Shown: positions 532-30,200 of the stretch, one piece after another | How the letters are laid out: each line of letters starts with the position of its first letter | How positions within the stretch are numbered: the stretch's first letter is position 1 | Assembly (NCBI RefSeq): GCF_902652985.1 | Contig: NC_047023.1 | Coordinates: 5,518,001 to 5,582,000, forward strand | Direction: 5' to 3' | Length of the DNA: 64,000 nt | Origin: Pecten maximus | Taxonomy: Eukaryota | Translations under genes and position numbers: made by a program | Notes under the pieces: generated by a model | Databases searched by the model: none | What the model was told of the DNA's origin: nothing | The model's input: the letters and a program-made list of their open reading frames with translations, nothing else

Positions 532-584
532 ATGGCTGATCCAAGAGTAAGACAACTGACAATCAAAACAGGAGTAGTGAAAAG
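532..584 (+). CDS. TBCA: TBCA coding exon 1
   Basis: ATG at 532, MADPRVRQLTIKTGVVK(R), donor AG|GTAAGG at 585. Confidence 0.96.
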
Positions 585-3500
585 GTAAGGTGGTTTGATT
601 TTGACATTGAGAATACAAGGCGTTATACGATACGACACCGGTCATTAGTCCACTTCAGACTCGTTGCCAAGCTTGGGGCTTTTCCTTTTGGACATGAAAT
701 TACATGTACGTGCAACTTGTGAGCATACTTTGTTTTACAATTTTAGTCTCCCATCGTATGTTTATATTTTGAATGCTTAAATGTGTTTCCTTTTCATTTA
801 TGTCGTATGACATCATTCACAGCTGCAACAGGACACATGCAATTTGTATCATCGATATTTATAGCATGTAGTTGATGTACCTGGTACAGTAGACTTGTAC
901 AAGCCCCAGACTGAATTTTGGCTGGCTGGCATAAATAGACTTTTTTTTTTTTGTTAAGAATTGCTCATCTAAATTATAATACTAGCTTGAAACTCTAGAA
1001 TCAGACATGTCTTAGAGACCGATATCATAAAGGCCAATCTTGTAATTTTATTAGTTTAGAGACACTGAGACAGGGTCATACTAGAAAGAATATCCATACC
1101 CTGTCTACACTTCTCTCCAGCAGACAACACACTACCATCTGTCTGAAATTGTCCATCGTCCTGATCTATCGCAGCTAACCTTAGGGTCATGGCATCATAT
1201 GGACCATCAGCTGCCAATCTTAAATCAATTATTTGACATGATTTCACAAATTGAATGAATGGATCATAGGCCTATTAGACTGACTAAGTTTGAATTTAGG
1301 AAGTACAAATTCAACCAATAATAAACCATAAAAATAAAATCAACTGTGATGGCAGTGAATAGAATACTGATGGACAATAACTGTCAATTACTGAATAAAA
1401 AAATATGGAAAATCATTTAAATGACAACTTAAAAAAAAAATCATGTGAATCCTAAATAACAGATATTGAAGATCTTTGAGTTCACAAAAAACCATGATCA
1501 CGAAGATTCCACATCTGCTTTTTTTCAGAATGAATGTTAAAAACTTTATTCTATTTTTTCAATGACTTGTACCACAGACACACAGAATGCTATAAATGTA
1601 ATTAGTTACTTATCCTTTGTTATGTATAATGGTAATTACTGGTCTGGGAACTGTGGTAAGGGCGATAACTCCCAACTTGCAGTTTGGAGGTTTGTTGAAC
1701 TCTTTTGTGTTTAGAGGAAAAGAAATAGAGAGAAGGCGATTGTTGAGAGAAAACGAAACACGTGTTACGAGTGTTTTTTTTGATTTTTAAAAGATAATAT
1801 TGAGCTAATTCCCCGGACAAACACTACATGGTGGAGAATTCGAATTGAAAAGAAGGTTTGTGAGTTTTAGCGCGATATGTGACGGATTGTTATGAGTAAG
1901 TGTGTTTTATTTAGCGATTCTCGATTTGCTGGTGCTCATTTGGACGAGTTAACATTGCGAGTATCAAGGGGGTCAACACTTCGAGACCACATAGGTTTAC
2001 TTAGGAACTTCGACCACACCAATTATAAGCTCTATATATTTTGTGTTGGTATCAATGACATCCCTGATGATATAGCTAACTATATTGACCAATGTAAAAC
2101 TAATCTATATGAAAGTCTTGTTTCTACAATTTTGAACATCGAACAACACGTTCAAAATAAAATTCCATCGGCTTTAATACTTTTCGGCACCGTTCCACCA
2201 AAAGATATCAGACGTACAGTTGCCAAATATCCTTCTAAATCACGCTTGACTCTTGCTGAAGTATGTCCAAGATATCAGCAACACTTTGAGGACTTTTTAA
2301 TGGGGCTGAATGACTTCATATCAAATTTCAATACCGCACACACTGGAGTACATTTAGGCCTTCACACTGACCTTCGGATCCATATATCACGTGGCCGCAT
2401 ATCTAGGTTTTCATACTTTAAATTGCATGATGGCCTACATCCACGACAAAGTTTACTTTCTGTGTGGCAGCGCAAAGTTTTGTTTGTATATCATGAACTT
2501 GTCCAATAAAAACTGCTGATTTTGAGTCGAAAGCCCACCGGCCGACTATATCAACGTACAAACTCTACTTGTCTTTTCATTTGCATATTTACTGACCTTA
2601 GTCACATGGTTTTGTTGTTGAAAGCCCACCGGCCGACACAAAATTGTGATATATATGAATTTGTATAGTATACTCAGGCCTACAGTTTGTGTGTGTATAT
2701 AATTGTATGACAAATATTATAAAAGTCACATGTTTTGTTGAAAGCCCACCGGCCGACATACATGTGTGTGTTTCATTGGCTGCATATTATTAATTGCATT
2801 TATTGTCTCGAAATTAACCTGCAGAGTGAAAACTTTCAAATTTTGTTTGATATAAATGTGTTCACTATTTTAAATCTTGAAAGCCTACCGGCCAACATCT
2901 GTGAACTATTCTTCCAAGGATGAAAAACAGAGGTGAAATTTGTAAAATAACTGGTCACATGTCATGAATAGCCTTACACCTCCATTAATTTACAATGTGG
3001 AAAATGAATATGATAGTGATTCGGACATTCTTGATGACAATTTTTTAAAAACAAATCAACTTTTTGAGGACTCATTCAAATTTGAAAATGATAGTTCTTC
3101 ATGTTCCATTATAATATAATGGTAATTACTGGTCTGGGAACTGTGGTAAGGGCGATAACTCCCAACTTGCAGTTTGGAGGTTTGTTGAACTCTTTTGTGT
3201 TTAGAGGAAAAGAAATAGAGAGAAGGCGATTGTTGAGAGAAAACGAAACACGTGTTACGAGTGTTTTTTTTGATTTTTAAAAGATAATATTGAGCTAATT
3301 CCCCGGACAAACACTACACCTTATATTGACCCAAACATCTGCCTATAATAGGAATCCGAGAGTAAGTTGTCAATGATATTGACAGTAGATTGTTAAAAAA
3401 TTGTCTTTCATGTATCAAGATTGCCAAAACTATGATGTGTGTTGATAGTATAGTGATCATGATCATGTTATCATATCATGCTGGATAATTCATTTATAAA

Positions 3501-6500
3501 CCTATGTTCATGGTAAAAGTAGACTAGAGTATAAGGTCATCATACTATAGCTCAAGCTACAAATGTAGCGAGAGTTTTCCTTCAGCTTTCTGTTTTGCGT
3601 CCATAAACAATTTACATTTTCGGCTTCTTCACAGCAACCTCTGAACCAATTTAAATAGAACTTAACAAAAACTTTTCATGGCCAAAAATTTAACAAAATT
3701 GTAAAATCATGACCCTGGAATCTCACGTTTGCTCCTTGGGAGGGAATAAACTTGATATCGTTTATAAATTAGGGAAATCACATTTTTGACTATCATTTTT
3801 ATTTCTGTTGGAATTTCTAATTCTAAATTGGTTTGAATTAGCAGGTTTTGTGGTATATGTTATATTGCCCCTGACTGACACACATGGGGCTGATGGGTGG
3901 GGCTAACAATTACCCTAACAAGGACATGGAGGAATTAAATGTGCAATATTTAGGGTCAATTTAGCTAATTTAATTCTCCTGTAAGATGAATTGCAGGAAG
4001 TTTTCCAAATTTTCTGTATCAACAATTAAAATGGAACTACATACAAATGTTATATCAATATCCCCTTTTACCAACTGGTGAAAGCTACAAGACCCAGAGC
4101 CTCACTTAATTTTTTTTTTTTTCAAACTAGGATATCTTACTATACACATTTCTGTTGGGTATGCAGAAAGTGTTGGTTTAATATTGATCAGGACAGTTAT
4201 TTTACATATATATATAATAATATATATATATATGCTATATAATGTTTTTGTGTGTCATTGTTGTACTTTGTCTTAGCTATTGTAGGTTGAGTCATGACAT
4301 ACAAATTACATTATCATTTTTTTTTTTTACAGATTAACAAAGGAAAAGTTTTCATATGAAAAAGAGGCTATAATGCTAGAAAAAAAAGTAGAGAAGATGG
4401 CAGCTGATGGGAAGGATGAATATGATATCAGGAAACAGGTACATTGATACAAGGTCCACCTTAGTGATATGAAGTATTTATTTAGCTATAAAACAATTTT
4501 TAGAACTTCTGACCCAAAGATGACAAAGTGCTGTTATTTTTCAGCCTCGTAAAATTTTGAACTATTCATTAACTTATCTATTAACAGCCACGACGGCCAT
4601 TTTGTAACATGATTGTGAAATCATGGTTTTCTTGAACAACACCTATTTTTTAAAGTTATATTAAGGATAGAAAATTGAAAGATTTTAATTTTAGAATGTG
4701 ACCATTTTGTACTGATTTTGAGTAATTTCTAAAAATTTCGTGAAGAAATATGTTTTTTTTTCTCTCTCGCGATGCATTCTGTTAGGTATGTGTACCTTTC
4801 TGGCAACAGCTATGGAGGTGACATCTTTAAAAATTAATAGTTTTCTAGATATATATATATGTACATGTATATGGTAAAATCCTCTCAGTACATAGGTTTT
4901 ATTATGATTTTAGCCCTATATTTAACAAAGTACATAGTTTTTATTATGATTTTAGCCCTATATTTAACAAAGTACATAGTTTTTATTATGATTTTAGCCC
5001 TTATATTTAACAAAGTACATAGTTTTTATTATGATTTTCGCCCTATATTTAACAAAGTACATACTTTTTATTATGATTTTAGCCCTATATTTAACAAAGT
5101 ACATACTTTTTATTATGATTTTAGCCCTATATTTAACAGAGTACATAGTTTTTATTATGATTTTAGCCCTATACTTAACAGAGTACATACTTTTTATTAT
5201 GATTTTAGCCCTTTATTTAACAGAGTACATAGTTTTTATTATGATTTTAGCCCTTTATTTAACACAGAGTACATAGTTTTTATTATGATTTTAGCCATAT
5301 ATTTAACAGAGTACATAGTTTTTATTATGATTTTAGCCCTATATTTAACAGAGTACATAGTTTTTATTATGATTTTAGCCCTATATTTTACAGAGTACAT
5401 AGTTTTTATTATGATTTTAGCCCTATATTTAACAGAGTACATAGTTTTTATTATGATTTTAGCCCTATATTTAACAGAGTACATAGTTTTTATTATGATT
5501 TTAGCCCTTTATTTAACAGAGTACATAGTTTTTATTATGATTTTAGCCCTTTATTTAACACAGAGTACATACTTTTTATTATGATTTTAGCCCTATATTT
5601 AACAAAGTACATAGTTTTTATTATGATTTTAGCCCTATATTTAACAGAGTACATAGTTTTTATTATGATTTTAGCCCTATATTTAACAGAGTACATAGTT
5701 TTTATTATGATTTTAGCCCTATATTTTACAGAGTACATAGTTTTTATTATGATTTTAGCCCTATATTTAACAGAGTACATAGTTTTTATTATGATTTTAG
5801 CCCTTTATTTAACAGAGTACATGGTTTTTATTATGATTTTAGCCCTTTATTTAACAGAGTACATAGTTTTTATTATGATTTTAGCCCTATATTTAACAGA
5901 GTACATAGTTTTTATTATGATTTTAGCCCTTTATTTAACAGTTCTTAGCTTACCTGGATACATGAGTTACAACTGCTATCATATGTATAATTGTGTAACA
6001 ACATCTTGCTTGGTTTTTCAATGAAGAAAAACTGCACTTTCTAGAAAGGACTATATTGTCAAAATGTCTTTACTTACAGAAGGAAGTTTTGGAAGAAAGC
6101 CAGAAAATGGTTCCAGATACACAGAGGAGATTGAAAAAGGGTTTAGAAGATTTAGAATCCTACATGGTAACTATATGACAGGATATGATAGAAAATATAG
6201 GATTTAAGTAATTAATGAAAATTTGAATTTCTGATAAACTACTCCTATATATCACAGCTGTATATTCATCACAAAGTGGTCAGTGAAGTGTTATCTAGTT
6301 GGTGTAGGGGTGGCATGGGGTATACTGGAATCAAGTTGTCTGTCCATCTGTCTGTCTGTAGACACAACAATATACATACTACATATGTACATACTCTTCC
6401 AAAACTATTGAGGGAATTTCAATGAAGCTTGCTGGCAATATTCCTTATACATTTTGTTTCCCTTCAATAACTTCAGTAATTTTTAACAGATTAGTTTAGA

Positions 6501-7008
6501 CAGGCCTAGGTTTATTAACACAAGGGTTTGTCACGTTAAGGGTGTGTGGAATGGACCCTTTTTTTCTCTTGATCAGTCAACCAAGATGGCTGCAGCATGT
6601 GTTTCGTTGCCATATAGCCATGGCATTTGCACCTTCAGTATTATTGGAGGCGCCGGATATGGTTTCCCATTACAATTAAAGTTTGTTATATAAATGCAAT
6701 AATCCTTATACCTTGTAGATGTACATGTACATAATCTATAAGAGATATAATCTACCTCCCCATTTTGGAAAGCTAAATTGACCCAGACCCTAGTGTTACA
6801 AGACTACAACTGATAGTGATTAATGTTTTGAAGCTGAATAACACCCACCTATTGTGGTAGAAATTAGTATTCTGTCAAACATGCAAATATTATACAAATA
6901 CATTGTGACATATACACAAATGTATATTCAATTCCCTATATACAATACAATGTACATGTTTTAGCTTGAAGATATTTCTTTTTATGCCCCTGCCATGAAA
7001 TGGGGGGT

Positions 7009-10472: not shown

Positions 10473-11213
10473 TGATTATTTTCCTCTTACCCTGTTTACC
10501 TTCTTATGCATCTAATATTGACGTTACATCAATGCAAGGAAATTTTGACGTGACGTGATTTAATTGTCGACGTAACGTCATTGTACTGTTGCCGTGACGT
10601 CATGGTATTGTCATCTTCGCTAGCCAAGGCTTCTGATTACGTTACACTACACGAACCCTTGGCGGATATAGTCGTGTTCAAACCGCCGCGCCCTGGAATC
10701 CCAGGGCACCCAATCAAATCGCGTTTTACGTTCAGGCTTGGTTTCGCAGTAAACAAAAATTGCGGCACCCAGTACAGAGCTACAATGTCGACTATGTCAT
10801 GGCATTTTACCTATATACAGAGACGAACTATTTATAGGGAAACATTCGCAGTGTTTGATCAATCTATTTAAGTCATTGATCACATATCTCATCAAAATGA
10901 CACAAGCCTCCATGTGTGTTTGTAAACATGCATGCGATATTCTTATTGTGTCAAGTTTGGAGACGTCAGAGTGTAGTACTGCGATGGACGAAGGATTTCC
11001 GGATAGTTTTTTTTAAGGTGCTGGGAAACAGCAACCTTAAGAGGTCATCGCCAAATTTCGCTAGAACAGATTAATTCGGAACTCTCGGGGGAATCAAAAT
11101 GGGGCTTATTTCAATGATAAATCCCGATAAGTTCAGATGAAACGCTGACAACACACTAAACAATCTTGTCTACTTTCGCGAAGTATTTGTTAGCCTATAT
11201 TGGTTAAGTAATA

Positions 11214-11337
11214 TGATTCAACCTTTTATATGTTTGAATACATTTGTTGAATTTAAATAAATTATAGAAGGATTTTTTCCCTTCTTTGATTTATTTAAAT
11301 TCATCAAATGTATTCAAACATATAAATGGTTGAATCA
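11214..11337. repeat. 124-bp near-perfect palindrome (MITE-like hairpin)
   Basis: Arm TGATTCAACC...AGAAGG is the reverse complement of CCTTCT...GGTTGAATCA, with a short spacer. Confidence 0.8.
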
Positions 11338-12220
11338 AACAGCTTAAATCGTACAAGATGACCTGTTTTATCCCCGAGTAATGACGCTTGCTTACTGGTT
11401 TGTATGAGGGGAGGTAACTCGAATACACTCTAGTTAATGCGACAATGGAAAGTCGCCTTGGGCTCTATCTTGGGTTGCTAAAAATGGCCCGGCCTCGCCT
11501 ACAGTCGAATACTGTTTTTAGTTTCGAATTTTCCAATTGGAAATCGATAAGTAAAATCTCCGATTGCTTTTACATTCGATACTTAAAATGAAAGTAGAAT
11601 ACTTCCGATTACAATGTATAGTTCATCCTTTCCGAGTAAAAGGCCAAACAAAAATCGCAAAGTATACAACATGAACGTGCGATTCAACAAGTCACCGGAA
11701 CAGATAATGTAGGCCTTTTCATCGTGAACAAATTATACTTCCCAGAAGAGTTTCTTCTAACGAAAGTTGTCACGTTCTAATAAGGATACAGATCAGTTAT
11801 TACACGAAGAGAAAAGGGCAGTAAATGGAGTGCAATTTAAAAACCTAGGAAAGTAAACCGTGGGAGAGTAATTCACAGGAATCATATATAGAGAATCGCA
11901 AAAAACATGACCGACATCATACATTAATCGATCTAAGAATTAAACTTAGTCATAGTATGCCAATTCAGGTTAGGTTTAAAAACGTAATTCTTCGCTGTTC
12001 ATCACAACTATAACACAACCACGGCCTTTTAAAAGTAAATAAATTCCTGAGAATGACATAGGATAATCATCAGTAAAACAATCAGGAATGCACTTAAAAA
12101 AACAATAAAAACGTCTTATTATAACATGCCATTTTATATTCATATACATGTAATAGTTTTGTTTCTGTATTTCAATCCCCCATGCACAGCACATTTGAGT
12201 CGCCTCGACACTTTGATTTT

Positions 12221-13245: not shown

Positions 13246-13666
13246 TATTTACCACTTACGGTTTAAAAAAGAAAAATACAATGCAATGTAAAATTAACGG
13301 AATGCATGTTTCCGCGCCATTCTCGGCTGTGAGCTCTGCCATGTTATTTCGCGTAAAAAATGTAGTGCGTAAGTCTGGATAATAGAAAACCAGACAATAA
13401 TAATCTGTGTAATACAAATATTTCATATAAATTGATATTATGAAATGCAAAATATAAACTGTCCGTCAAGTGTCTCTAAAGGAAAATGTGTAATGATAGA
13501 TAGGCCTAGTGTACGCTGACGTGTAAGCTGCTAAACTTACTATAGCGATGCATATACAAATGTACGGTAGTCCCCCGTTAAACCGCCATCTTTTGTCCAG
13601 GGAAATGGGCCGGGGTTTGGCGGTATTTAAAACCCGGGTGCCGGGTTGACAAACGGGGGGTTTTTC

Positions 13667-14166
13667 NNNNNNNNNNNNNNNNNNNNNNNNNNNNNNNNNN
13701 NNNNNNNNNNNNNNNNNNNNNNNNNNNNNNNNNNNNNNNNNNNNNNNNNNNNNNNNNNNNNNNNNNNNNNNNNNNNNNNNNNNNNNNNNNNNNNNNNNNN
13801 NNNNNNNNNNNNNNNNNNNNNNNNNNNNNNNNNNNNNNNNNNNNNNNNNNNNNNNNNNNNNNNNNNNNNNNNNNNNNNNNNNNNNNNNNNNNNNNNNNNN
13901 NNNNNNNNNNNNNNNNNNNNNNNNNNNNNNNNNNNNNNNNNNNNNNNNNNNNNNNNNNNNNNNNNNNNNNNNNNNNNNNNNNNNNNNNNNNNNNNNNNNN
14001 NNNNNNNNNNNNNNNNNNNNNNNNNNNNNNNNNNNNNNNNNNNNNNNNNNNNNNNNNNNNNNNNNNNNNNNNNNNNNNNNNNNNNNNNNNNNNNNNNNNN
14101 NNNNNNNNNNNNNNNNNNNNNNNNNNNNNNNNNNNNNNNNNNNNNNNNNNNNNNNNNNNNNNNNNN
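13667..14166. other. Assembly gap (500 N)
   Basis: Fixed-length N run; true size unknown. Confidence 1.
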
Positions 14167-15478
14167 AAGTTTGGACTGGCATACTACAATGTGTTCTTTT
14201 GGATGAATTCAAGCCAAACAGGCGGTCGATTGCTGCCCAAATTCCGGTTTGATCTTCCTGATTTTGTTTATTACGTCGCTTCATGCCAATATGAGATGTG
14301 GGACGAAACAGGTCGTGTCTGTCACACTGACCGGTAGTCCTGTTCAGTTTGAATCCCATTCGGCACTGACACGTATAAGAACCAACGTCATTACGGCAGA
14401 TTTTGTCACTTGAACAATTTGCCACGCCATCATAACATTCGTCTTGGTCAATACAGATGCTATACTTAGGGGACCATATGAAGCCTTTTCGTTCATTTTT
14501 ACAATTACACGTGTAGTTTATTCTGTTCCTTTGAAGATAATCAAAGACAGTGTTTTTTCCAGTCTCCCAAAAACAGGCTTTGTCTTTCAACCGCGAGCAC
14601 GGATTAAGAAGGTCGGCCACGCCTGACCTGAAGTCTTTAAAGTTACCAGAGTCATTCTTTCCATAACACGGATCAGGGCAAAACCATATATAGGCACACG
14701 TAAAAGGTGAAACATAGTTGGCTCTTTTAGCATTAGCTACGTAAATAGACCTTATGTCGTGTATTATATTGCCATTTGCTTCATGGGTTTTTTTCAGGTT
14801 TTCTAGACAGTGTCCCCCTTCGTATGCCAGAAGCTTGCGACGACGATCTGTGAACCAACACATGTAGTAGCTGGCAGTAGTTCGATACTGAAACTGTTCC
14901 AATGCAGAGCTGAACGGATATTCAGGGAGGAGTGCGTCCTTCTTGTAATGTTTATGGAATTTGGCAAGTGATCCGGACATATTGGCAACAGTGGCGATTT
15001 CCGTGATACATTCAAACTCACCTTTATTGCAAGCTTTCTCCACAACCGGATGGAGCTTCTTTAGACGTGGAATTGGGAAATGCTTGTAGAATTTACGATC
15101 TTCATATTTAGTCGTCGAAAACGTGTATCTTCTATCAACTTCGAAGTATTTATGAGCTGCTAGATAGATACCAGCAAGTTTTAAGCTTGCTGCCATCATA
15201 TTTGGAAATATTTTTTCCATCGACTCACTTTTTCTCTTGGCCAATTTCACCCAGCTCACGATGCCGTAAGGTTCAGATTTACGCTTCACACGAAAAAGAG
15301 GCTTTTGTGACACCGGTTTACCATTAGTGATATCCATTACGGAATAGTTTCTGTCTGATTTTTCGATTTGATGCACAAGTAATTGCCGAATATCATTGCT
15401 ACTTAAGCTCACTGCAACATCCGTGAAATAAAGTGCACACAAAAGTATAACCGTAGTTTTCACAGACATATTTCCCAT
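14167..15478 (-). CDS. Secreted cysteine-rich protein with a C-terminal calcium-binding EGF domain; intronless, 3'-partial (>=437 aa)
   Basis: Long clean ORF with a signal-peptide-like N-terminus (VILLCALYFTDVAVS) and basic processing sites (RVKRK). Cys-rich region YYMCWFT..FCPDPCY..NYTCNC; canonical cbEGF DQDEC...CRNDVGSYTCQCRMGF...C at 14324-14449. The stop codon lies in the gap. Confidence 0.9.
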
Positions 15479-23455: not shown

Positions 23456-24029
23456 ATTTAAAGGTAGACATATGTCACTGAACGTCTTTCCAACACAATG
23501 ATGGATTAAAACAAATAGACATCAGAGAGATCCTGTCCTGAGGGCTCATTTGTATGGATAACAGCAAAATGCACACGTCTCTATCTGTCATTTCTACCCC
23601 CCCCCCCCCCCCCAAAAAAAACCAAACAAACAAAAACTTCCGTGTCAGCTGTTGGAACCTTTTTGTAAAACAATCCATCTCTATTTCTTTCCACCGGACA
23701 TTCATACGGAGGAGTGCCAACATTGATGGGTTGCCGCTTGTGTGATTTTTCATTTTCTTTATCACAGGGAGAATGTTCTTCCTCCGGAGTAAATTGCGTT
23801 CTTTAATGCCGGCGGGGGAGCCATATCTGAAAAATATAGTAAAATGTCTGGCCAATATAAGCTCAAATAACGGAAGCATCAATGTTGTCTGATAATAACC
23901 ATATACATAAACACCAAACATGTCGTTACTACATAACATCATATCGACTGTAATAAAAACACCGACACGCACGTCAGTCAATTATATTAATATCAGAACT
24001 CTTATTGCTTGAGAAACTCGCATGTGCTA

Positions 24030-26235
24030 AACACTTACCGTCCTTATACTGCTGAACATTTACCGCCCTCATACTGCTGAACACTTACCGCCCCCATACT
24101 GCTGAACACTTACCGCCCCCATACTGCTGAACACTTACCGCCCCCATACTGCTGAACACTTACCGCCCCCATACTGCTGAACACTTACCGGCCCCATATT
24201 GCCGAACGCTTATAATTACCGCCCCTATATACTGCTGAACACTTACCGTCCTCATACTGCTGAACACTTACCGCCCCCATACTGTTGAACACTTACCGCC
24301 CCCATACTGTTGAACACTTACCGCCCCCATACTGCTGAACACTTACCGCCCCCATACTGCTGAACGCTTACCGCCCCATACTGCTGAACACTTACCCGCC
24401 CCATATTGCTGAACGCTTATAATTACCGCCCTATATACTGCTGAACACTTACCGCCCCCATACTGCTGAACGCTTATAATTACCGCCCCCATACTGTTGT
24501 ACACTTACCGCCCCCCATACTGCTGAAAACCTACCGTCCTCATACTGCCGAACACTTACCGTCCTCATACTGCTGAACACTTACCGCTCCCATACTGATG
24601 AACGCTTACCGCCCCCATACTGCTGAACACTTACCGCCCCCATACTGTTGAACACTTACCGCCCCCATACTGCTGAACACTTACCGCCCCCATACTGCTG
24701 AACGCTTACCGCCCCCATACTGCTGAACACTTACCCGCCCCATATTGCTGAACGCTTATAATTACCGCCCTATATACTGCTGAACACTTACCGCCCCCAT
24801 ACTGCTGAACGCTTATAATTACCGCCCCCATACTGTTGTACACTTACCGCCCCCATACTGCTGAACACCTACCGTCCTCATACTGCCGAACACTTACCGT
24901 CCTCATACTGCTGAACACTTACCGCTCCCATACTGATGAACGCTTACCGCCCTCCATACTGCTGAACACTTACCGCCCCCATACCGATGAACGCTTACCG
25001 CCCTCCATACTGCTGAACACTTACCGCCCCCATACTGCTGAACACTTACCGCCCCCATACTGCTGAACGCTTATAATTACCGCCCCTATACTGCTGAACA
25101 CTTACCGCTCCCATAATGCTGAACCCTTACCGCCCTCCATACTGCTGAACACTTACCGCCCCCATACTGCTGAACACTTACCGCCCCCATACTGCTGAAC
25201 GCTTATAATTACCGCCCCTATACTGCTGAACACTTACCGCCCTCATACTGCTGAACACTTACCGCTCCCATAATGCTGAACCCTTACCGTCCTCATACTG
25301 CTGAACACTTACCGTCCTCATACTACTGAACACTTACCGTCCTCATACTGCTGAACACTTACCGTCCTCATACTGCTGAACACTTACCGCCCTCATACTT
25401 CTGAACACTTAACGTCCTCATACTGCCGAACACTTACCGTCCTCATACTGCCGAACACTTACCGTCCTCATACTGCTGAACACTTACCGTCCTCATACTG
25501 CTGAACACTTACCGTCCTCATACTGCTGAACACTTACCGCCCCCATACTGCTGAACACTTACCGTCCTCATACTGCTGAACGCTTATAATTACCGTCCTC
25601 ATACTACTGAACACTTACCGTCCTCATACTACTGAACACTTACCGTCCTCACACTGCCGAACACTTACCGTCCTCATACTGCCGAACACTTACCGTCCTC
25701 ATACTGCCGAACACTTACCGTCCTCATACTGCTGAACACTTACCGTCCTCATACTGTTGAACGCTTACCGCCCTCATACTACTGAACACTTACCGTCCCC
25801 ATACTACTGAACACTTACCGCCCTCATACTGCTGAACACTTACCGCCCCCATACTGCTGAACACTGACCGCCCCCATACTGCTGAACACTTACCGCCCCA
25901 TACTGCTGAACACTTACCGCTCCCATACTAATGAACGCTTACCGCCCTCCATACTGCTGAACACTTACCGCCCCCATACTGCTGAACGCTTATAATTACC
26001 GCCCCTATACTGATGAACGCTTACCGCCCCCATACTGCTGAACGCTTATAATTACCGCCCCCATACTAATGAACACTTACCGCCCCCATACTGCTGAACA
26101 CTTACCGTCCTCATACTACTGAACACTTGCCGCCCCCATACTGCTGAACACATACCGTCCTCATACTGCTGAACACATACCGTCCTCATACTGCTGAACA
26201 CTTCCTGTCCTCAAACTGCTGAACACCAACCGCCC
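24030..26235. repeat. Minisatellite, 25-bp unit (31-bp variant with ATAATT)
   Basis: Unit AACACTTACCGCCCCCATACTGCTG. Confidence 0.95.
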
Positions 26236-26740: not shown

Positions 26741-27240
26741 GGATTTTGTGTCCAACCAAACACGGAATATATCGCCATTTTGTAGATTACCTGGATTTTG
26801 TTTTAATTTTAGTGCTTTCGTGACGCGAACACGATACGAATTTATTCTGCTCATACTTTTGACTTTCAACGCTAATTATTATTTTTTGTTAAACTACCGA
26901 AATCCCTATATACAATACGTCACACGATGTCGGTTCCACGTCTTGTCACAGGAAGAGGATTTCTCCTCAGTTTATATGTAAAATACTTTTTTAGTACCTA
27001 ATAAAATCATCAAATAAATTGTATGCCGAACAAGATCCGGTATCCGTGGCATGTTGTGTAGTAACGAACAAGTGATTGGGAGTTATTCCGCCTCTTACGT
27101 CGCCAAGAGAAAATATGAAACCAGGTTTCACGGAAACAAACTGATTTCAATATTTTCGAAAATAACTTATTTTCTTAATTATGCTGTACAAATGAGCAAG
27201 TTCAGCGCAATATTCATGGGGATGTACACCAAAAAAGGAT

Positions 27241-30200
27241 CTATATACAGACATTGATAGCTGTATGGTTTGATATAGATATAGACGGTATTGGCTGTGT
27301 GTGACGTGTCTATACAGACATTGATAGCTGTATGGTTTGATATAGATATATACGGTATTGGCTGTGTGTCACGTGTCTATACGGACATTGATAGCTGTAT
27401 GGTTTGATATAGATATAGACGGTATTGGCTGTGTGTGACGTATCTATACAGACATTGATAGCTGTATGGTTTGATGTAGATATATACGGTATTGGCTGTG
27501 TTTGACGTGTCTATACAGACATTGATAGCGGTATTGACTGTGTGTCACGTGTCTATACAGACATTGATAGCTGTATTGGCTGTGTGTGACGTGTCTATAC
27601 AGACATTGATAGCTGTATGGTTTGATATAGATATAGACGGTATTGGCTGTGTGTGACGTGTCTATACAGACATTGATAGCTGTATTGACTGTGTGTCACG
27701 TGTCTATACAGACATTGATAGCTGTATGGTTTGATATAGATATAGACGGTATTGGCTGTGTGTGACGTGTCTATACAGACATTGATAGCTGTATGGTTTG
27801 ATATAGATATAGACGGTATTGGCTGTGTGTGACGTGTCTATACAGACATTGATAGCTGTATTGACTGTGTGTCACGTGTCTATACAGACATTGATAGCTG
27901 TATGGTTTGATATAGATATAGACGGTATTGGCTGTGTGTGACGTGTCTATACATACATTGATAGCTGTATTGACTGTGTGTCACGTGTCTATACAGACAT
28001 TGATATTTGTATGGTTTGATATAGATATAGACGGTATTGGCTGTGTGTGTCGTGTCTATACAGAAATTGATAGCTGTATTGACTGTGTGTCACGTGTCTA
28101 TACAGACATTGATAGCTGTATTGGCTGCATGTGTGCGATGTGTCTATACAGACATTGATAGTTGTATTGATTGTGTGTGACGTGTCTATACAGACATTGA
28201 TAGCTGTATTGGCTGTGTGTGACGTGTCTATACAGACATTGATAGCTGTATGGTTTGATATATATATAGACGGTATTGACGGTGTGTGATGTGTCTATAC
28301 AGACATTGATATTTGTATGGTTTGATATAGATATAGACGGTATTGGCTGTGTGTGACGTGTCTATACAGACATTGATAGCTGTATTGACTGTGTGTCACG
28401 TGTCTATACAGACATTGATAGCTGTATGGTTTGATATAGATATAGACGGTATTGGCTGTGTGTGGCGTGTCTATACAGACATTGATATTTGTATGGTTTG
28501 ATATAGATATAGACGGTATTGGCTGTGTGTGACGTGTCTATACAGACATTGATAGCTGTATTGACTGTGTGTCACGTGTCTATACAGACATTGCTAGCTG
28601 TATGGTTTGATATATATATAGACGGTATTGGCTGTGTGTGACGTGTCTATACAGACATTGATAGCTGTATTGGCTGTGTGTCACGTGTCTATACAGACAT
28701 TGATAGTTGTATTGGCTGTGTGTGACGTGTCTATACAGACATTGATAGTTGTATTGGCTGTTTGTGACGTGTCTATACAGACATTGATAGCTGTATTGGC
28801 TGTGTGTGATGTGTCTATACAGACATTGATAGCTGTATGGTTTGATATAGATATAGACGGTATTGGCTGTGTGTGACGTGTCTATACAGACATTGATAGC
28901 GGTATTGGCTGTGTGTGACGTGTCTATACAGACATTGATAGCTGTATGGTTTGATGTAGATATAGACGGTATTGGCTGTGTGTGACGTGTCTATACAGAC
29001 ATTGATAGCTGTATGGTTTGATGTAGATATAGACGGTATTGGCTGTGTGTGACGTGTCTATACAGACAATGATAGATGTATTGGCTGTGTGTCACGTGTC
29101 TATACAGACATTGATAGCTGTATGGTTTGATATAGATATAGACGGTATTGGCTGTGTGTGACGTGTTTATACAGACATTGATAGCTGTATTGGCTATGTG
29201 TGATGTGTCTATACAGACATTGATAGCTGTTTTGGCTGTGTGTCACATCTCTATACAGACATTGATAGCTGTATGGTTTGATATAGATATAGACGGTATT
29301 GGCTGTGTGTCACGTGTCTATACAGACATTGATAGCTGTATTGACTTTGTGTGACGTGTCTATACAGACATTGATAGCTTTATTGGCCGTGTGTGTCGTG
29401 TCTATACAGACATTGATAGCTGTATGGTTTGATATAGATATAGACGGTATTGACTGTGTGTGACGTGTCTATACAGACATTGATAGCTGTATTGGCTGTG
29501 TGTCACATCTCTATACAGACATTGATAGCTGTATGGTTTGATATAGATATAGACGTTATTGACTGTGTGTGACGTGTCTATACAGACATTGATAGCTGTA
29601 TTGGCTGTGTGTGACGTGTCTATACAGACATTGATAGCTGTATGGTTTGTCTATACGACATATAGATGCTTTGGTGTGTGTGACGTGTCTATACAGACAT
29701 TGATAGCTGTATGTTGATATGATATAACGGATTGGTTACGTGTGAGCTAGGTGTCTATACATACATTGATAGCTGTATTGGCTGTGTGTGACGTGTCTAT
29801 ACAGACATTGATAGCTGTATTGGCTGTGTGTGACGTGTCTATACAGACATTGATAGCTGTATTGGCTGTGTGTGACGTGTCTATACAGACATTGATAGCT
29901 GTATGGTTTGATATAGATATAGACGATATTGAGTGTGTGACGTGTCTATACAGACATTGATAGCTGTATGGTTTGATATAGATATACGGTATTGGCTGTG
30001 TGTGACGTGTCTATACAGACATTGATATTTGTATGGTTTGATATAGATATAGACGGTATTGACTGTGTGTGACGTGTCTATACAGACATTGATAGCTGTA
30101 ATTGGCTGTTGTTGATGGTGTCTATACAGACATTGATAGCTGTATGGGTTGATATAGATATAGACGGTATTGGCTGTGTGTCACATGTCTATACAGACAT

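What the first reader, a model, noticed from the sequence alone, without database searches (positions are those of the whole stretch)
1618..3318. Young miniature LTR retroelement whose only gene is an SGNH hydrolase
Seen: a 1.7-kb unit bounded by a CCTT TSD and TGT..ACA ends, with LTRs identical over 204 bp and a PBS. About 60 nt after the 5' LTR, where gag would start, is a single intact 205-aa SGNH/GDSL ORF, then AATAAA and a hairpin array. No gag, RT, RNase H or integrase motifs. Known: SGNH esterase domains occur in ORF1 of non-LTR elements (CR1/L2 group) and in some Penelope-like elements, while TRIM/LARD-type non-autonomous LTR elements are normally non-coding. Inference: this is a recently mobile, trans-mobilised LTR cassette carrying an enzyme cargo, an architecture I do not recognise as described. 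It sits in sense orientation in intron 1 of an essential housekeeping gene.
Basis: partly seen in the sequence, partly recalled or inferred. Interest (0 to 1): 0.87.

Follow-up and report, generated by a model that had tools for sequence, protein, structure and literature searches.

The report
Deleted copy of an esterase-carrying Gypsy retrotransposon
The 1.7-kb "mini element" is a single, very recent insertion of an ordinary 8.5-kb Gypsy-type jumping gene that lost 6.8 kb of its interior. The more interesting point is that the whole Gypsy lineage carries a conserved esterase gene in front of gag.

Summary
Two 204-bp repeats are 100% identical, the outer ends are TGT…ACA, CCTT is duplicated, there is a primer-binding site and an intact 205-aa SGNH ORF followed by AATAAA and four hairpins, and the unit sits in sense orientation in intron 1 of TBCA.

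The interpretation does not hold. The same LTRs bound about ten 8.5-kb Ty3/Gypsy elements with the layout LTR, PBS, SGNH ORF0, hairpins, gag-PR-RT-RNase H-IN, PPT, LTR. Most have their own 4-bp duplication.

The window copy is one of these with about 6.78 kb deleted, from gag codon 49 to nucleotide 7 of the 3' LTR. The PPT is gone, and the 3' LTR start is truncated while the 5' LTR is complete. The junction occurs once in the genome. It is therefore a one-off dead-end derivative, not a trans-mobilised miniature family.

An empty site with a single CCTT lies 13.5 kb upstream on the same scaffold, so the insertion is real and recent.

At least four Gypsy families in this genome keep the ORF0 esterase (dN/dS about 0.1 between the three families compared). 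I confirmed the SGNH fold with a model of pLDDT 95.6.

This scan had already noted such a Gypsy ORF0 on other DNA of this genome (s1-784584). GDSL ORFs in LTR elements are published for bdelloid rotifers. Reads and RNA data could not be reached.

The parts
1614..1617 (.). 5' target-site duplication CCTT
   Evidence: The empty-site copy in L066 has a single CCTT.
1618..1828 (+). Complete 5' LTR, 211 bp, TGT...ACA
   Evidence: Matches over positions 1-211 the LTRs of about ten full-length elements at 93-98% identity.
1800..1814 (+). 15-nt stretch near the LTR end complementary to positions 1-15 of host tRNA-Ala(AGC)
   Evidence: Chance expectation is about 1e-5 (my estimate). This was also noted in scan note s1-792194.
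1829..1842 (+). Primer-binding site, complementary to the 3' end plus CCA of tRNA-Ala(AGC)
   Evidence: The tRNA-Ala genes were found in the own genome. Complementarity is 14/14 in most copies. Here it is 11 perfect, then one G-U position, then 2 more.
1892..2509 (+). ORF0: intact 205-aa SGNH/GDSL-type esterase
   Evidence: - Intact ORF.
- Pfam Lipase_GDSL E=0.004, below the cutoff. Relatives P0003 and P0008 pass the cutoff.
- AlphaFold model pLDDT 95.6.
- Foldseek top hits are GDSL lipases, sialate O-acetylesterases and PAF-AH.
- Blocks DSR, G, GIND and DGLH are conserved.
- dN/dS is about 0.1 between families.
2505..2510 (+). AATAAA overlapping the ORF0 stop codon
   Evidence: Read from the sequence. 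Its use as a poly(A) signal is not tested.
2525..2897 (+). Four spaced hairpins (2525-2547, 2616-2638, 2736-2758, 2875-2897) with an 18-nt conserved core
   Evidence: - Located.
- The first three fold at -8.6 to -9.3 kcal/mol as a 5-bp stem, AAA bulge, 3-bp stem and CACC loop. The fourth forms only the inner 3-bp stem (-3.5 kcal/mol).
- The same core occurs in families B and C.
- 95.5% of cells are paired and 2 pairs show compensatory change.
- No Rfam family matches.
2964..3111 (+). Remnant of gag: first 49 codons
   Evidence: In full-length copies the same ATG opens a gag-pol frame of about 2,020 codons. Identity to gag ends at 3111.
3112..3114 (+). Deletion junction: 3 nt (TAA) assignable to neither side
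   Evidence: The 91-nt stretch across the junction occurs only here in the genome.
3115..3318 (+). 3' LTR lacking its first 7 nt (LTR positions 8-211); no PPT upstream
   Evidence: Full-length copies have a purine-rich tract ending GGCGGGGA immediately before TGTTATG.
3319..3322 (.). 3' target-site duplication CCTT
532..584 (+). Host gene TBCA, coding part of exon 1 (donor GT at 585)
   Evidence: The translation is MADPRVRQLTIKTGVVK, then the splice donor. Assignment to TBCA rests on exons 2 and 3 and on my memory of the TBCA N-terminus.
4333..4438 (+). Host gene TBCA exon 2 (approximate 3' end); the element therefore lies in intron 1, same strand
   Evidence: Pfam TBCA 41.5 bits against a cutoff of 30.3. 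Acceptor AG is at 4331-4332 (repeat D5). Exon 3 lies within the stop-free stretch 5999-6175 and scores 31.9 bits.

Best explanation
**What it is.** Window 1618-3318 is one recent insertion of an autonomous Ty3/Gypsy LTR retrotransposon of about 8.48 kb, here called family A. Its layout is a 211-bp LTR, a tRNA-Ala PBS, the SGNH esterase ORF0, AATAAA, a hairpin array, one gag-PR-RT-RNase H-IN frame, a PPT and a second LTR.

**The deletion.** This copy lost about 6.78 kb by a non-homologous or microhomology deletion. The deletion runs from gag codon 49 to nucleotide 7 of the 3' LTR.
- The 5' LTR has the complete U3 start, while the 3' LTR and the PPT are truncated.
- The deletion must therefore have happened on DNA after both LTRs had been made. 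It most likely happened after integration into TBCA intron 1.
- The copy is a dead end. It has no PPT and no complete U3 end to pass on.
- It may still express the esterase from its 5' LTR.

**ORF0 (inferred).** The esterase ORF0 is a selected accessory gene of this Gypsy lineage and is cytosolic. By analogy with the esterases of CR1/L2 elements, it probably acts on lipids or acetylated substrates during particle assembly or trafficking. It may be expressed from a short transcript ending at the AATAAA, with read-through giving the genomic gag-pol RNA.
For: **Shown**
- The same LTRs occur in pairs about 8.3 kb apart at ten or more loci. The window's 1,286-bp interior follows each 5' LTR at 93-99% identity.
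- Eight of the nine LTR-pair copies read at both ends have their own 4-bp duplication (GGTT, GAAT, CATG, ATAT, CCGT, TGGT, ATAG, GGGT). So does a solo LTR (CTAT), and the C17 5' end and C1147 3' end share CCTG. All 3' LTRs read are preceded by the same purine-rich PPT.
- The one copy I read through in overlapping pieces has a single open gag-pol frame. It carries Retrotrans_gag, aspartic protease, RVT_1, RT_RNaseH, Integrase_H2C2 and rve, in Ty3/Gypsy order.
- Junction anatomy: gag identity ends at 3111, then 3 unassigned nt, then LTR position 8 onward.
- The junction is unique in the genome. All other copies split the 91-nt probe at position 55/56.
- An empty site with a single CCTT lies 13.5 kb upstream.
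- The LTRs show 0 mismatches in 204 bp, against 0-5 in other copies.

**ORF0**
- It is intact in 11 of 13 family-A copies.
- The same 205-aa ORF followed by the same hairpin core precedes gag in families B and C. A fourth family sits at the same distance from RT.
- Between-family dN/dS is about 0.08-0.12, with no indels.
- The SGNH fold and catalytic blocks are confirmed.
Against: - The deletion has therefore not been verified independently of the assembly.
- Transcription, poly(A) use and esterase activity are all untested.
- The timing of the deletion (before or after integration) is inferred from LTR asymmetry only.
- The empty-site copy may be a retained second haplotype or a true paralogous duplication. 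It begins right after a 500-N gap.
- Within-family dN/dS is uninformative because there are too few changes.
Confidence: 0.85

Rival explanations
1. It is a non-autonomous, trans-mobilised miniature LTR element (TRIM/LARD-like) whose cargo is the esterase.
For: It is bounded by identical LTRs, with a duplication, a PBS and an intact ORF. Autonomous relatives that could supply proteins exist in the genome.
Against: - There is only one copy. No other LTR pair has the 1,490-bp spacing and the junction is unique.
- The PPT is absent.
- The 3' LTR lacks nt 1-7 while the 5' LTR has them. In reverse transcription both LTRs copy the same U3, so a short RNA could not have given this asymmetry.
Confidence: 0.03
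2. The insertion is a full-length element, and the internal deletion is an assembly error.
For: The region lies near scaffold gaps and near a duplicated, possibly haplotypic block. That shows the local assembly is imperfect. Reads could not be examined.
Against: - Assemblers collapse between long repeats, which here would give a solo LTR.
- This junction instead joins gag codon 49 to LTR nt 8, with at most 3-4 nt of microhomology and 3 unassigned nt. That looks like a biological end-joining event.
Confidence: 0.06
3. The copy was 'born deleted'. The 6.8-kb deletion arose late in reverse transcription, by a plus-strand template jump on a full-length minus strand, and the defective DNA was then integrated.
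For: - The outer ends and the duplication are normal.
- The LTRs are identical and the insertion may still be heterozygous, so there has been little time for a second event.
- Short microhomology (TTA/TTAT) is present at the junction.
Against: - Nothing distinguishes this from a deletion after integration.
- It needs a heteroduplex with a 6.8-kb loop to be integrated and resolved.
- A jump during minus-strand synthesis is excluded, because the 5' LTR would then also lack nt 1-7.
Confidence: 0.2

Closest known systems
Ty3/Gypsy (Metaviridae) LTR retrotransposons and their internally deleted copies
   Same: - LTRs with TG...CA ends and a 4-bp duplication.
- tRNA-complementary PBS and a PPT.
- gag, two CCHC knuckles, PR, RT, RNase H and IN order in the full-length relatives.
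- Internally deleted single copies are commonplace.
   Different: An extra esterase gene and a hairpin array lie between the PBS and gag. The LTRs are very short at 211 bp.
GDSL esterase ORF3 of bdelloid rotifer Vesta LTR retrotransposons (Rodriguez, Kenefick and Arkhipova 2017, PMC5408684)
   Same: A stand-alone SGNH/GDSL esterase ORF with intact catalytic residues and no transmembrane or coiled-coil part, carried by an LTR retrotransposon. The same module is also shared with other transposon classes of the host (scan notes).
   Different: In Vesta the ORF lies downstream of pol, in the env position. Here it lies upstream of gag. The host phylum differs. Sequence relatedness to Vesta was not tested because no Vesta sequence was at hand.
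Esterase domain of ORF1p of CR1/L2/RTEX non-LTR retrotransposons (ZfL2-1, PDB 4c1b; Schneider et al. 2013, PMC3905857)
   Same: An SGNH esterase encoded in front of the polymerase gene of a retroelement. There is a weak profile match (E=6.7e-4 over about 65 residues) and a fold match (rank 34).
   Different: In those elements the esterase is a domain of a multimerising ORF1p with a coiled coil, and they have no gag. Here it is a separate 205-aa protein beside a normal gag. Bacterial GDSL lipases, sialate O-acetylesterases and PAF-AH are closer by fold.
MDG1-group Drosophila Gypsy elements (412, mdg1) with small ORFs upstream of gag and a premature poly(A) site (bioRxiv 10.1101/2025.03.14.642691)
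   Same: Accessory ORF(s) lie between the 5' LTR and gag. A poly(A) signal before gag gives short and long RNA isoforms. That is the expression mode I infer here.
   Different: Their ORFs are about 70-110 aa and one is a FAST-like membrane protein. None is an enzyme.
SGNH ORF of Ngaro (tyrosine-recombinase) retrotransposons (PMC9210276, citing Goodwin and Poulter 2004)
   Same: A retroelement-borne SGNH hydrolase ORF of unproven function.
   Different: Ngaro elements have split direct repeats, a tyrosine recombinase and no integrase, and their ORF follows the recombinase. Here the LTRs are true LTRs, a duplication is present and the enzyme is an integrase.
TRIM/LARD non-autonomous LTR elements
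   Same: Short and LTR-bounded, with no polymerase.
   Different: Those are multi-copy families with an intact PBS and PPT. This is a single copy without a PPT and with a truncated 3' LTR.

Membership tests
LTR retrotransposon, Ty3/Gypsy | Direct LTRs ending TG...CA and flanked by a short target-site duplication | tested here: met
   The empty site has a single CCTT. Eight of nine other copies read at both ends have their own 4-bp duplication.
LTR retrotransposon, Ty3/Gypsy | PBS complementary to the 3' end of a host tRNA, directly after the 5' LTR | tested here: met
   The host tRNA is tRNA-Ala(AGC), with genes in the own genome. Complementarity is 14/14 nt in most copies and 13/14 here.
LTR retrotransposon, Ty3/Gypsy | Polypurine tract directly before the 3' LTR | tested here: not met
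   It is absent in the window copy, where gag sequence abuts the LTR. It is present in all full-length relatives. The window copy is therefore a defective member.
LTR retrotransposon, Ty3/Gypsy | gag and pol with the order PR-RT-RNase H-IN | tested here: met
   Met in the full-length relatives. In the window copy only 49 gag codons remain.
Non-autonomous LTR family (TRIM/LARD-like) | Several copies of the same short form at different sites with different duplications | tested here: not met
   The junction probe matches once in 918 Mb. No other LTR pair has this spacing.
Non-autonomous LTR family (TRIM/LARD-like) | Both LTRs complete, and cis signals (PBS and PPT) retained | tested here: not met
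   The 3' LTR lacks nt 1-7 and the PPT is deleted.
SGNH/GDSL hydrolase superfamily | Conserved blocks with Ser (I), Gly (II), Asn (III) and Asp-x-x-His (V) | tested here: met
   S10 lies in (S/T/A/G)DSR, G27, N55 in GIND, and D180/H183 in DGLH. All are invariant in families A-C and nearly invariant across 28 relatives.
SGNH/GDSL hydrolase superfamily | Sequence-profile membership (Pfam Lipase_GDSL at the gathering score) | tested here: inconclusive
   - The window protein scores 17.7 bits against a cutoff of 23.6.
- Relatives P0003 (25.2 bits) and P0008 (30 bits) pass.
- The 28-sequence profile hits GDSL lipase 3p94 at 2.7e-5.
SGNH/GDSL hydrolase superfamily | Flavodoxin-like alpha/beta/alpha SGNH fold | tested here: met
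   The model has pLDDT 95.6 and pTM 0.91. Foldseek gives probability 1.00 and TM 0.63-0.68 to GDSL lipases, sialate O-acetylesterases and PAF-AH.
SGNH/GDSL hydrolase superfamily | Esterase activity | not testable with these tools
   Needs recombinant protein and an assay.
CR1/L2-type ORF1p esterase | Esterase fused to the coiled-coil or RNA-binding parts of ORF1p, in an element without gag | tested here: not met
   The 205-aa protein is the SGNH domain only. The element has a normal gag.
Vesta-type GDSL ORF3 | ORF located downstream of pol | tested here: not met
   Here the ORF lies between the PBS and gag in all four families.

The most novel reading that the evidence does not exclude
The parent lineage may be an undescribed clade of Ty3/Gypsy elements in bivalves, represented by at least four families in this genome. 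In that reading it has three linked features:
- An SGNH esterase ORF0 is an obligatory, selected accessory gene. It would be expressed as a short LTR-driven transcript that ends at the AATAAA.
- A conserved array of sequence-invariant hairpins lies between ORF0 and gag. It would serve packaging, dimerisation or translation of gag.
- A two-part tRNA-Ala binding site is present.

Defective copies such as this one would then add esterase expression in trans.
Probability: 0.3. Interest if true: 0.55.

Novelty: new variant of a known kind. Interest (0 to 1): 0.35.

Why it matters
As posed, the finding is ordinary. A single internally deleted retrotransposon copy is not a new class of element.

The parent lineage is worth keeping in view for four reasons:
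- It adds an "esterase in front of gag" layout to the few cases where LTR retrotransposons carry an enzyme beyond gag-pol.
- The esterase is under clear purifying selection across families.
- The same genome carries 147 or more mostly open copies of this esterase family. Unchecked scan notes place some of them on other transposon classes.
- That recurrence bears on the open question of why unrelated retroelements (CR1/L2, Penelope-like, Ngaro, Vesta) repeatedly acquire SGNH esterases.

The filled and empty site pair in TBCA intron 1 is also a ready marker for very recent transposition in this animal.

Tried and rejected

I read the full-length copy in overlapping loci from three walking searches and did not join them.
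There is therefore no read support, no RNA evidence and no read laying.
The genomic context of the esterase relatives in other organisms is unknown.

**Searches that found nothing useful**
- The search for homologous proteins found nothing for the 205-aa protein.
- The three-sequence profile found nothing real in the PDB.
- Rfam gave no family for the hairpins or anything else in the element. They are not histone stem-loops, a possibility raised by scan note s1-787418.
- The bacterial promoter/terminator scan is irrelevant here.
- The first tRNA pattern, with a TTCRA T-loop, gave only chance hits and no tRNA. The second pattern found the tRNA-Ala clusters.
- No Pfam domain was found in the pol C-terminus, so the chromodomain-like look is unconfirmed. 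None was found in the 320-aa spacer between RNase H and IN either.
- Literature searches found no description of an SGNH ORF upstream of gag in Gypsy elements or in bivalves. The library is incomplete and Repbase could not be consulted.

**Ideas considered and dropped**
- The GTAAGT just after the ORF0 start codon could be a splice donor. It is not conserved in families B and C, so I dropped it.
- Within-family dN/dS is too noisy to use.
Full report
**Observation**

Window 1618-3318 is bounded by direct repeats 1625-1828 and 3115-3318, which are 204 nt and 100% identical. The 5' repeat extends 7 nt further left, to TGTTATG at 1618. Both repeats end in ACA, and CCTT flanks both sides. The only long ORF is 1892-2509, 205 aa. 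AATAAA at 2505-2510 overlaps its stop codon. Four copies of an 18-nt core follow, at 2529, 2620, 2740 and 2879.

Two details differ. The small ORF starting at 2964 is the start of a gag gene. The 3' repeat lacks the first 7 nt of the LTR.

**What the genome shows**

A search of the window's own assembly with the LTR found it in pairs about 8.3 kb apart on C2 (twice), C4, C6, C10, C11, C13 (twice), C3764 and C17/C1147, plus an older copy on C8. There is also a solo LTR on C3 and some fragments.

The 1,286-bp interior of the window element matches, end to end at 93-99% identity, the sequence that follows the 5' LTR of each of those long elements. Contigs C3895 and C759 repeat the C2 and C4 loci with the same flanks, so they are probably second-haplotype contigs.

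Eight of the nine LTR-pair copies read at both ends have their own 4-bp duplication: GGTT, GAAT, CATG, ATAT, CCGT, TGGT, ATAG and GGGT. The solo LTR has CTAT, and the C17 5' end and the C1147 3' end share CCTG. The second C2 copy has no matching duplication. Every 3' LTR read is preceded by the same purine-rich tract ending GGCGGGGA.

I read one long copy in overlapping pieces, without joining them. Three overlapping stop-free stretches cover it, and I read them as one frame. The ATG that corresponds to window 2964 opens this frame of about 2,020 codons. It holds Retrotrans_gag/Ty3 capsid, two CCHC knuckles, an aspartic protease, RVT_1, RT_RNaseH, Integrase_H2C2 and rve. That is the Ty3/Gypsy order. 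The full element is 8,480 bp.

**What the window copy is**

Identity to gag runs to 3111, which is codon 49. Three nucleotides (TAA) follow that belong to neither side, and from 3115 the sequence is LTR position 8 onward. About 6.78 kb is missing, including the rest of gag-pol, the PPT and the first 7 nt of the 3' LTR.

A 91-nt probe across the junction matches only this place in 918 Mb. Every other copy matches either its gag half or its LTR half. No other LTR pair has the 1,490-bp spacing.

In reverse transcription both LTRs receive the same U3. A short RNA lacking the U3 start would therefore give two truncated LTRs, yet here the 5' LTR is complete. This step rests on the established mechanism of LTR retroelement replication.

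- The deletion therefore happened on DNA after the LTRs were made. It was either after integration, which I favour, or late in plus-strand synthesis.
- A jump during minus-strand synthesis is excluded by the same argument.
- Without a PPT and a complete U3 end, the copy cannot yield integration-competent progeny even in trans.

**Empty site and age**

The 5' flank has a second copy 13.5 kb upstream on the same scaffold, at C9:5505610-5506055. It continues directly, after a single CCTT, into the sequence that follows the element in the window. Identity is 99.6% over 447 nt and 98.5% over 1,510 nt, falling to 92% further on.

That copy starts right after a 500-N gap. The sequence before the gap resembles window 10.9-11.9 kb. 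The arrangement looks more like a retained second haplotype than a clean tandem duplication, but I could not decide this without reads. I did not try to fill any N stretch.

Either way it is the unoccupied target, and it proves insertion with a 4-bp duplication. With zero differences between the LTRs, against 0-5 in other copies, the insertion is very recent.

**Host gene**

Window 532-584 encodes MADPRVRQLTIKTGVVK, followed by a GT donor. The stretches 4298-4444 and 5999-6175 hold exons that match Pfam TBCA above its cutoff, at 41.5 and 31.9 bits against 30.3. The acceptor of exon 2 is at 4331-4332.

**The primer site**

The own genome has clusters of tRNA-Ala(AGC) genes. The 14 nt after the 5' LTR are complementary to the 3' end plus CCA of this tRNA in most family copies, and to 13 of 14 here. 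Window 1800-1814, inside the LTR, is complementary to tRNA positions 1-15. This confirms scan note s1-792194.

**The esterase**

- Pfam gives only a sub-threshold Lipase_GDSL match for the window protein.
- A full scan of 1.8 billion representatives with a three-family profile found 91 relatives, mostly stand-alone proteins of 200-270 aa. Two of the ten I scanned pass the Pfam cutoff.
- A 28-sequence profile hits the GDSL lipase 3p94 at 2.7e-5 and the ZfL2-1 ORF1p esterase 4c1b at 6.7e-4.
- The AlphaFold model has pLDDT 95.6. Its best structural matches are GDSL lipases, sialate O-acetylesterases and PAF acetylhydrolase, at TM 0.63-0.68. ZfL2-1 is at rank 34.
- The four catalytic blocks are conserved.
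- The protein starts directly with the first strand of the fold, so it shows no sign of a signal peptide. This is read from the model and was not tested with a predictor.

**Is ORF0 a real part of the element?**

It is. The ORF is intact in 11 of 13 family-A copies. Two further Gypsy families in the genome, B and C, are about 33-40% diverged in DNA. Both have the same 205-aa ORF, with no indels, followed by 3 to 7 copies of the same hairpin core and then gag. A fourth family has the ORF at the same distance from RT.

Between families dN/dS is about 0.08-0.12, with dS saturated. Within the family the few changes are uninformative. The genome holds at least 147 matches to this esterase family, most of them open. 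Scan notes place some of them on Mutator-like, Ngaro and other elements (unchecked by me).

**The hairpins**

In three of the four window copies, the core folds as a 5-bp stem, an AAA bulge, a 3-bp stem and a CACC loop, at -8.6 to -9.3 kcal/mol. The fourth window copy forms only the inner 3-bp stem, at -3.5 kcal/mol. Over 14 copies from three families, 95.5% of cells pair and two pairs show compensatory changes (C-G, U-G, U-A). Only 7 of 500 shuffles reach that score.

The bulge, inner stem and loop are nearly invariant in sequence. I read that as pointing to sequence-specific recognition. No Rfam family matches. Their position, between the PBS and gag, is where retroviral packaging and dimerisation signals lie. 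That is an analogy, not a result.

**How it probably works (inference)**

The LTR drives a transcript whose first ORF is the esterase. AATAAA at the ORF's end may terminate part of the transcripts, giving a short esterase mRNA, while read-through RNA serves as genome and gag-pol mRNA. This is as shown for the small upstream ORFs of the Drosophila MDG1 group.

The enzyme may act on lipids or acetylated substrates during particle assembly or trafficking, as proposed for the ZfL2-1 esterase and for the Vesta ORF3. None of this could be tested here.

**Comparison and novelty**

GDSL esterase ORFs in LTR retrotransposons are published for bdelloid rotifers, but downstream of pol. SGNH ORFs are also known in CR1/L2/RTEX, Penelope-like and Ngaro elements. 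Accessory ORFs upstream of gag are known in the MDG1 group.

I found no paper describing an SGNH ORF upstream of gag in a Gypsy element or in bivalves. The library is partial and Repbase was not available.

This scan had already noted such a Gypsy ORF0 on another piece of this genome (s1-784584). My results agree with that note and extend it.

The animal is called a scallop in a follow-up note of the scan. The assembly size and contig number match my memory of the Pecten maximus assembly, but I could not verify this.

**Verdict**

The proposed new class is not. The parent lineage is a new variant of a known kind and is moderately interesting.

Noticed in passing
L066 (G000:C9:5504110-5507555) against window 1171-6800 and 10929-11901: A second copy of part of the TBCA locus lies 13.5 kb upstream on the same scaffold. 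It begins right after a 500-N gap and lacks the element. The sequence before the gap resembles window 10.9-11.9 kb at 94.7%. This is probably a retained second haplotype, but it could be a real duplication.
   Followed up: partly
window 1800-1814 and 1829-1842: There is a two-part complementarity to host tRNA-Ala(AGC). The PBS pairs with the 3' end plus CCA, and 15 nt inside the LTR pair with tRNA positions 1-15, 14 nt upstream of the PBS. I verified this against tRNA genes from the own genome. Its role is unknown.
   Followed up: yes
window 4859-6024: A long minisatellite of AT-rich tandem units lies between TBCA exons 2 and 3. It gives spurious repetitive ORFs on both strands.
   Followed up: no
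window 13466-15478, minus strand: A 670-codon open frame with cysteine-rich, EGF-like stretches is interrupted by the 500-N run at 13667-14166. I did not examine it further and did not fill the Ns.
   Followed up: no
window 24000-26000 and 27200-30000: Two blocks have strong and opposite GC skew, about -0.5 at GC 0.5 and then about +0.4. They are probably satellite or repeat arrays. I did not examine them.
   Followed up: no
G000:C10:22018791-22021313 (L027, L030): The 5' LTR of the C10 family-A copy is split by an insertion of about 2.3 kb. LTR positions 143-149 are present on both sides, which suggests a 7-bp duplication made by another mobile element.
   Followed up: no
G000:C2:39227472-39235828 (L015, L018): This family-A copy has no matching 4-bp duplication (tacc against acgg). 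Its 5' LTR starts AGTT instead of TGTT, its ORF0 is frameshifted, and it has the most LTR differences, 5. It is an older or rearranged copy.
   Followed up: no
L044-L053 (family B), for example L044:2187-2540 against L046: The number of hairpin-core copies between ORF0 and gag varies among copies of one family (7 in L044, 5 in L046) and between families (4 in A, 3 in C).
   Followed up: partly
own genome: At least 147 matches to this esterase family occur in the genome. Many have open frames of 238-286 aa that are not next to these Gypsy families. Scan notes assign some of them to Mutator-like, Ngaro and TIR elements.
   Followed up: no
L063:248-1204 (minus strand), about 320 aa between RNase H and the integrase zinc finger: This long stretch of the pol frame has no Pfam match, and neither do the last 204 aa of pol. 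The content of both regions is unknown.
   Followed up: partly
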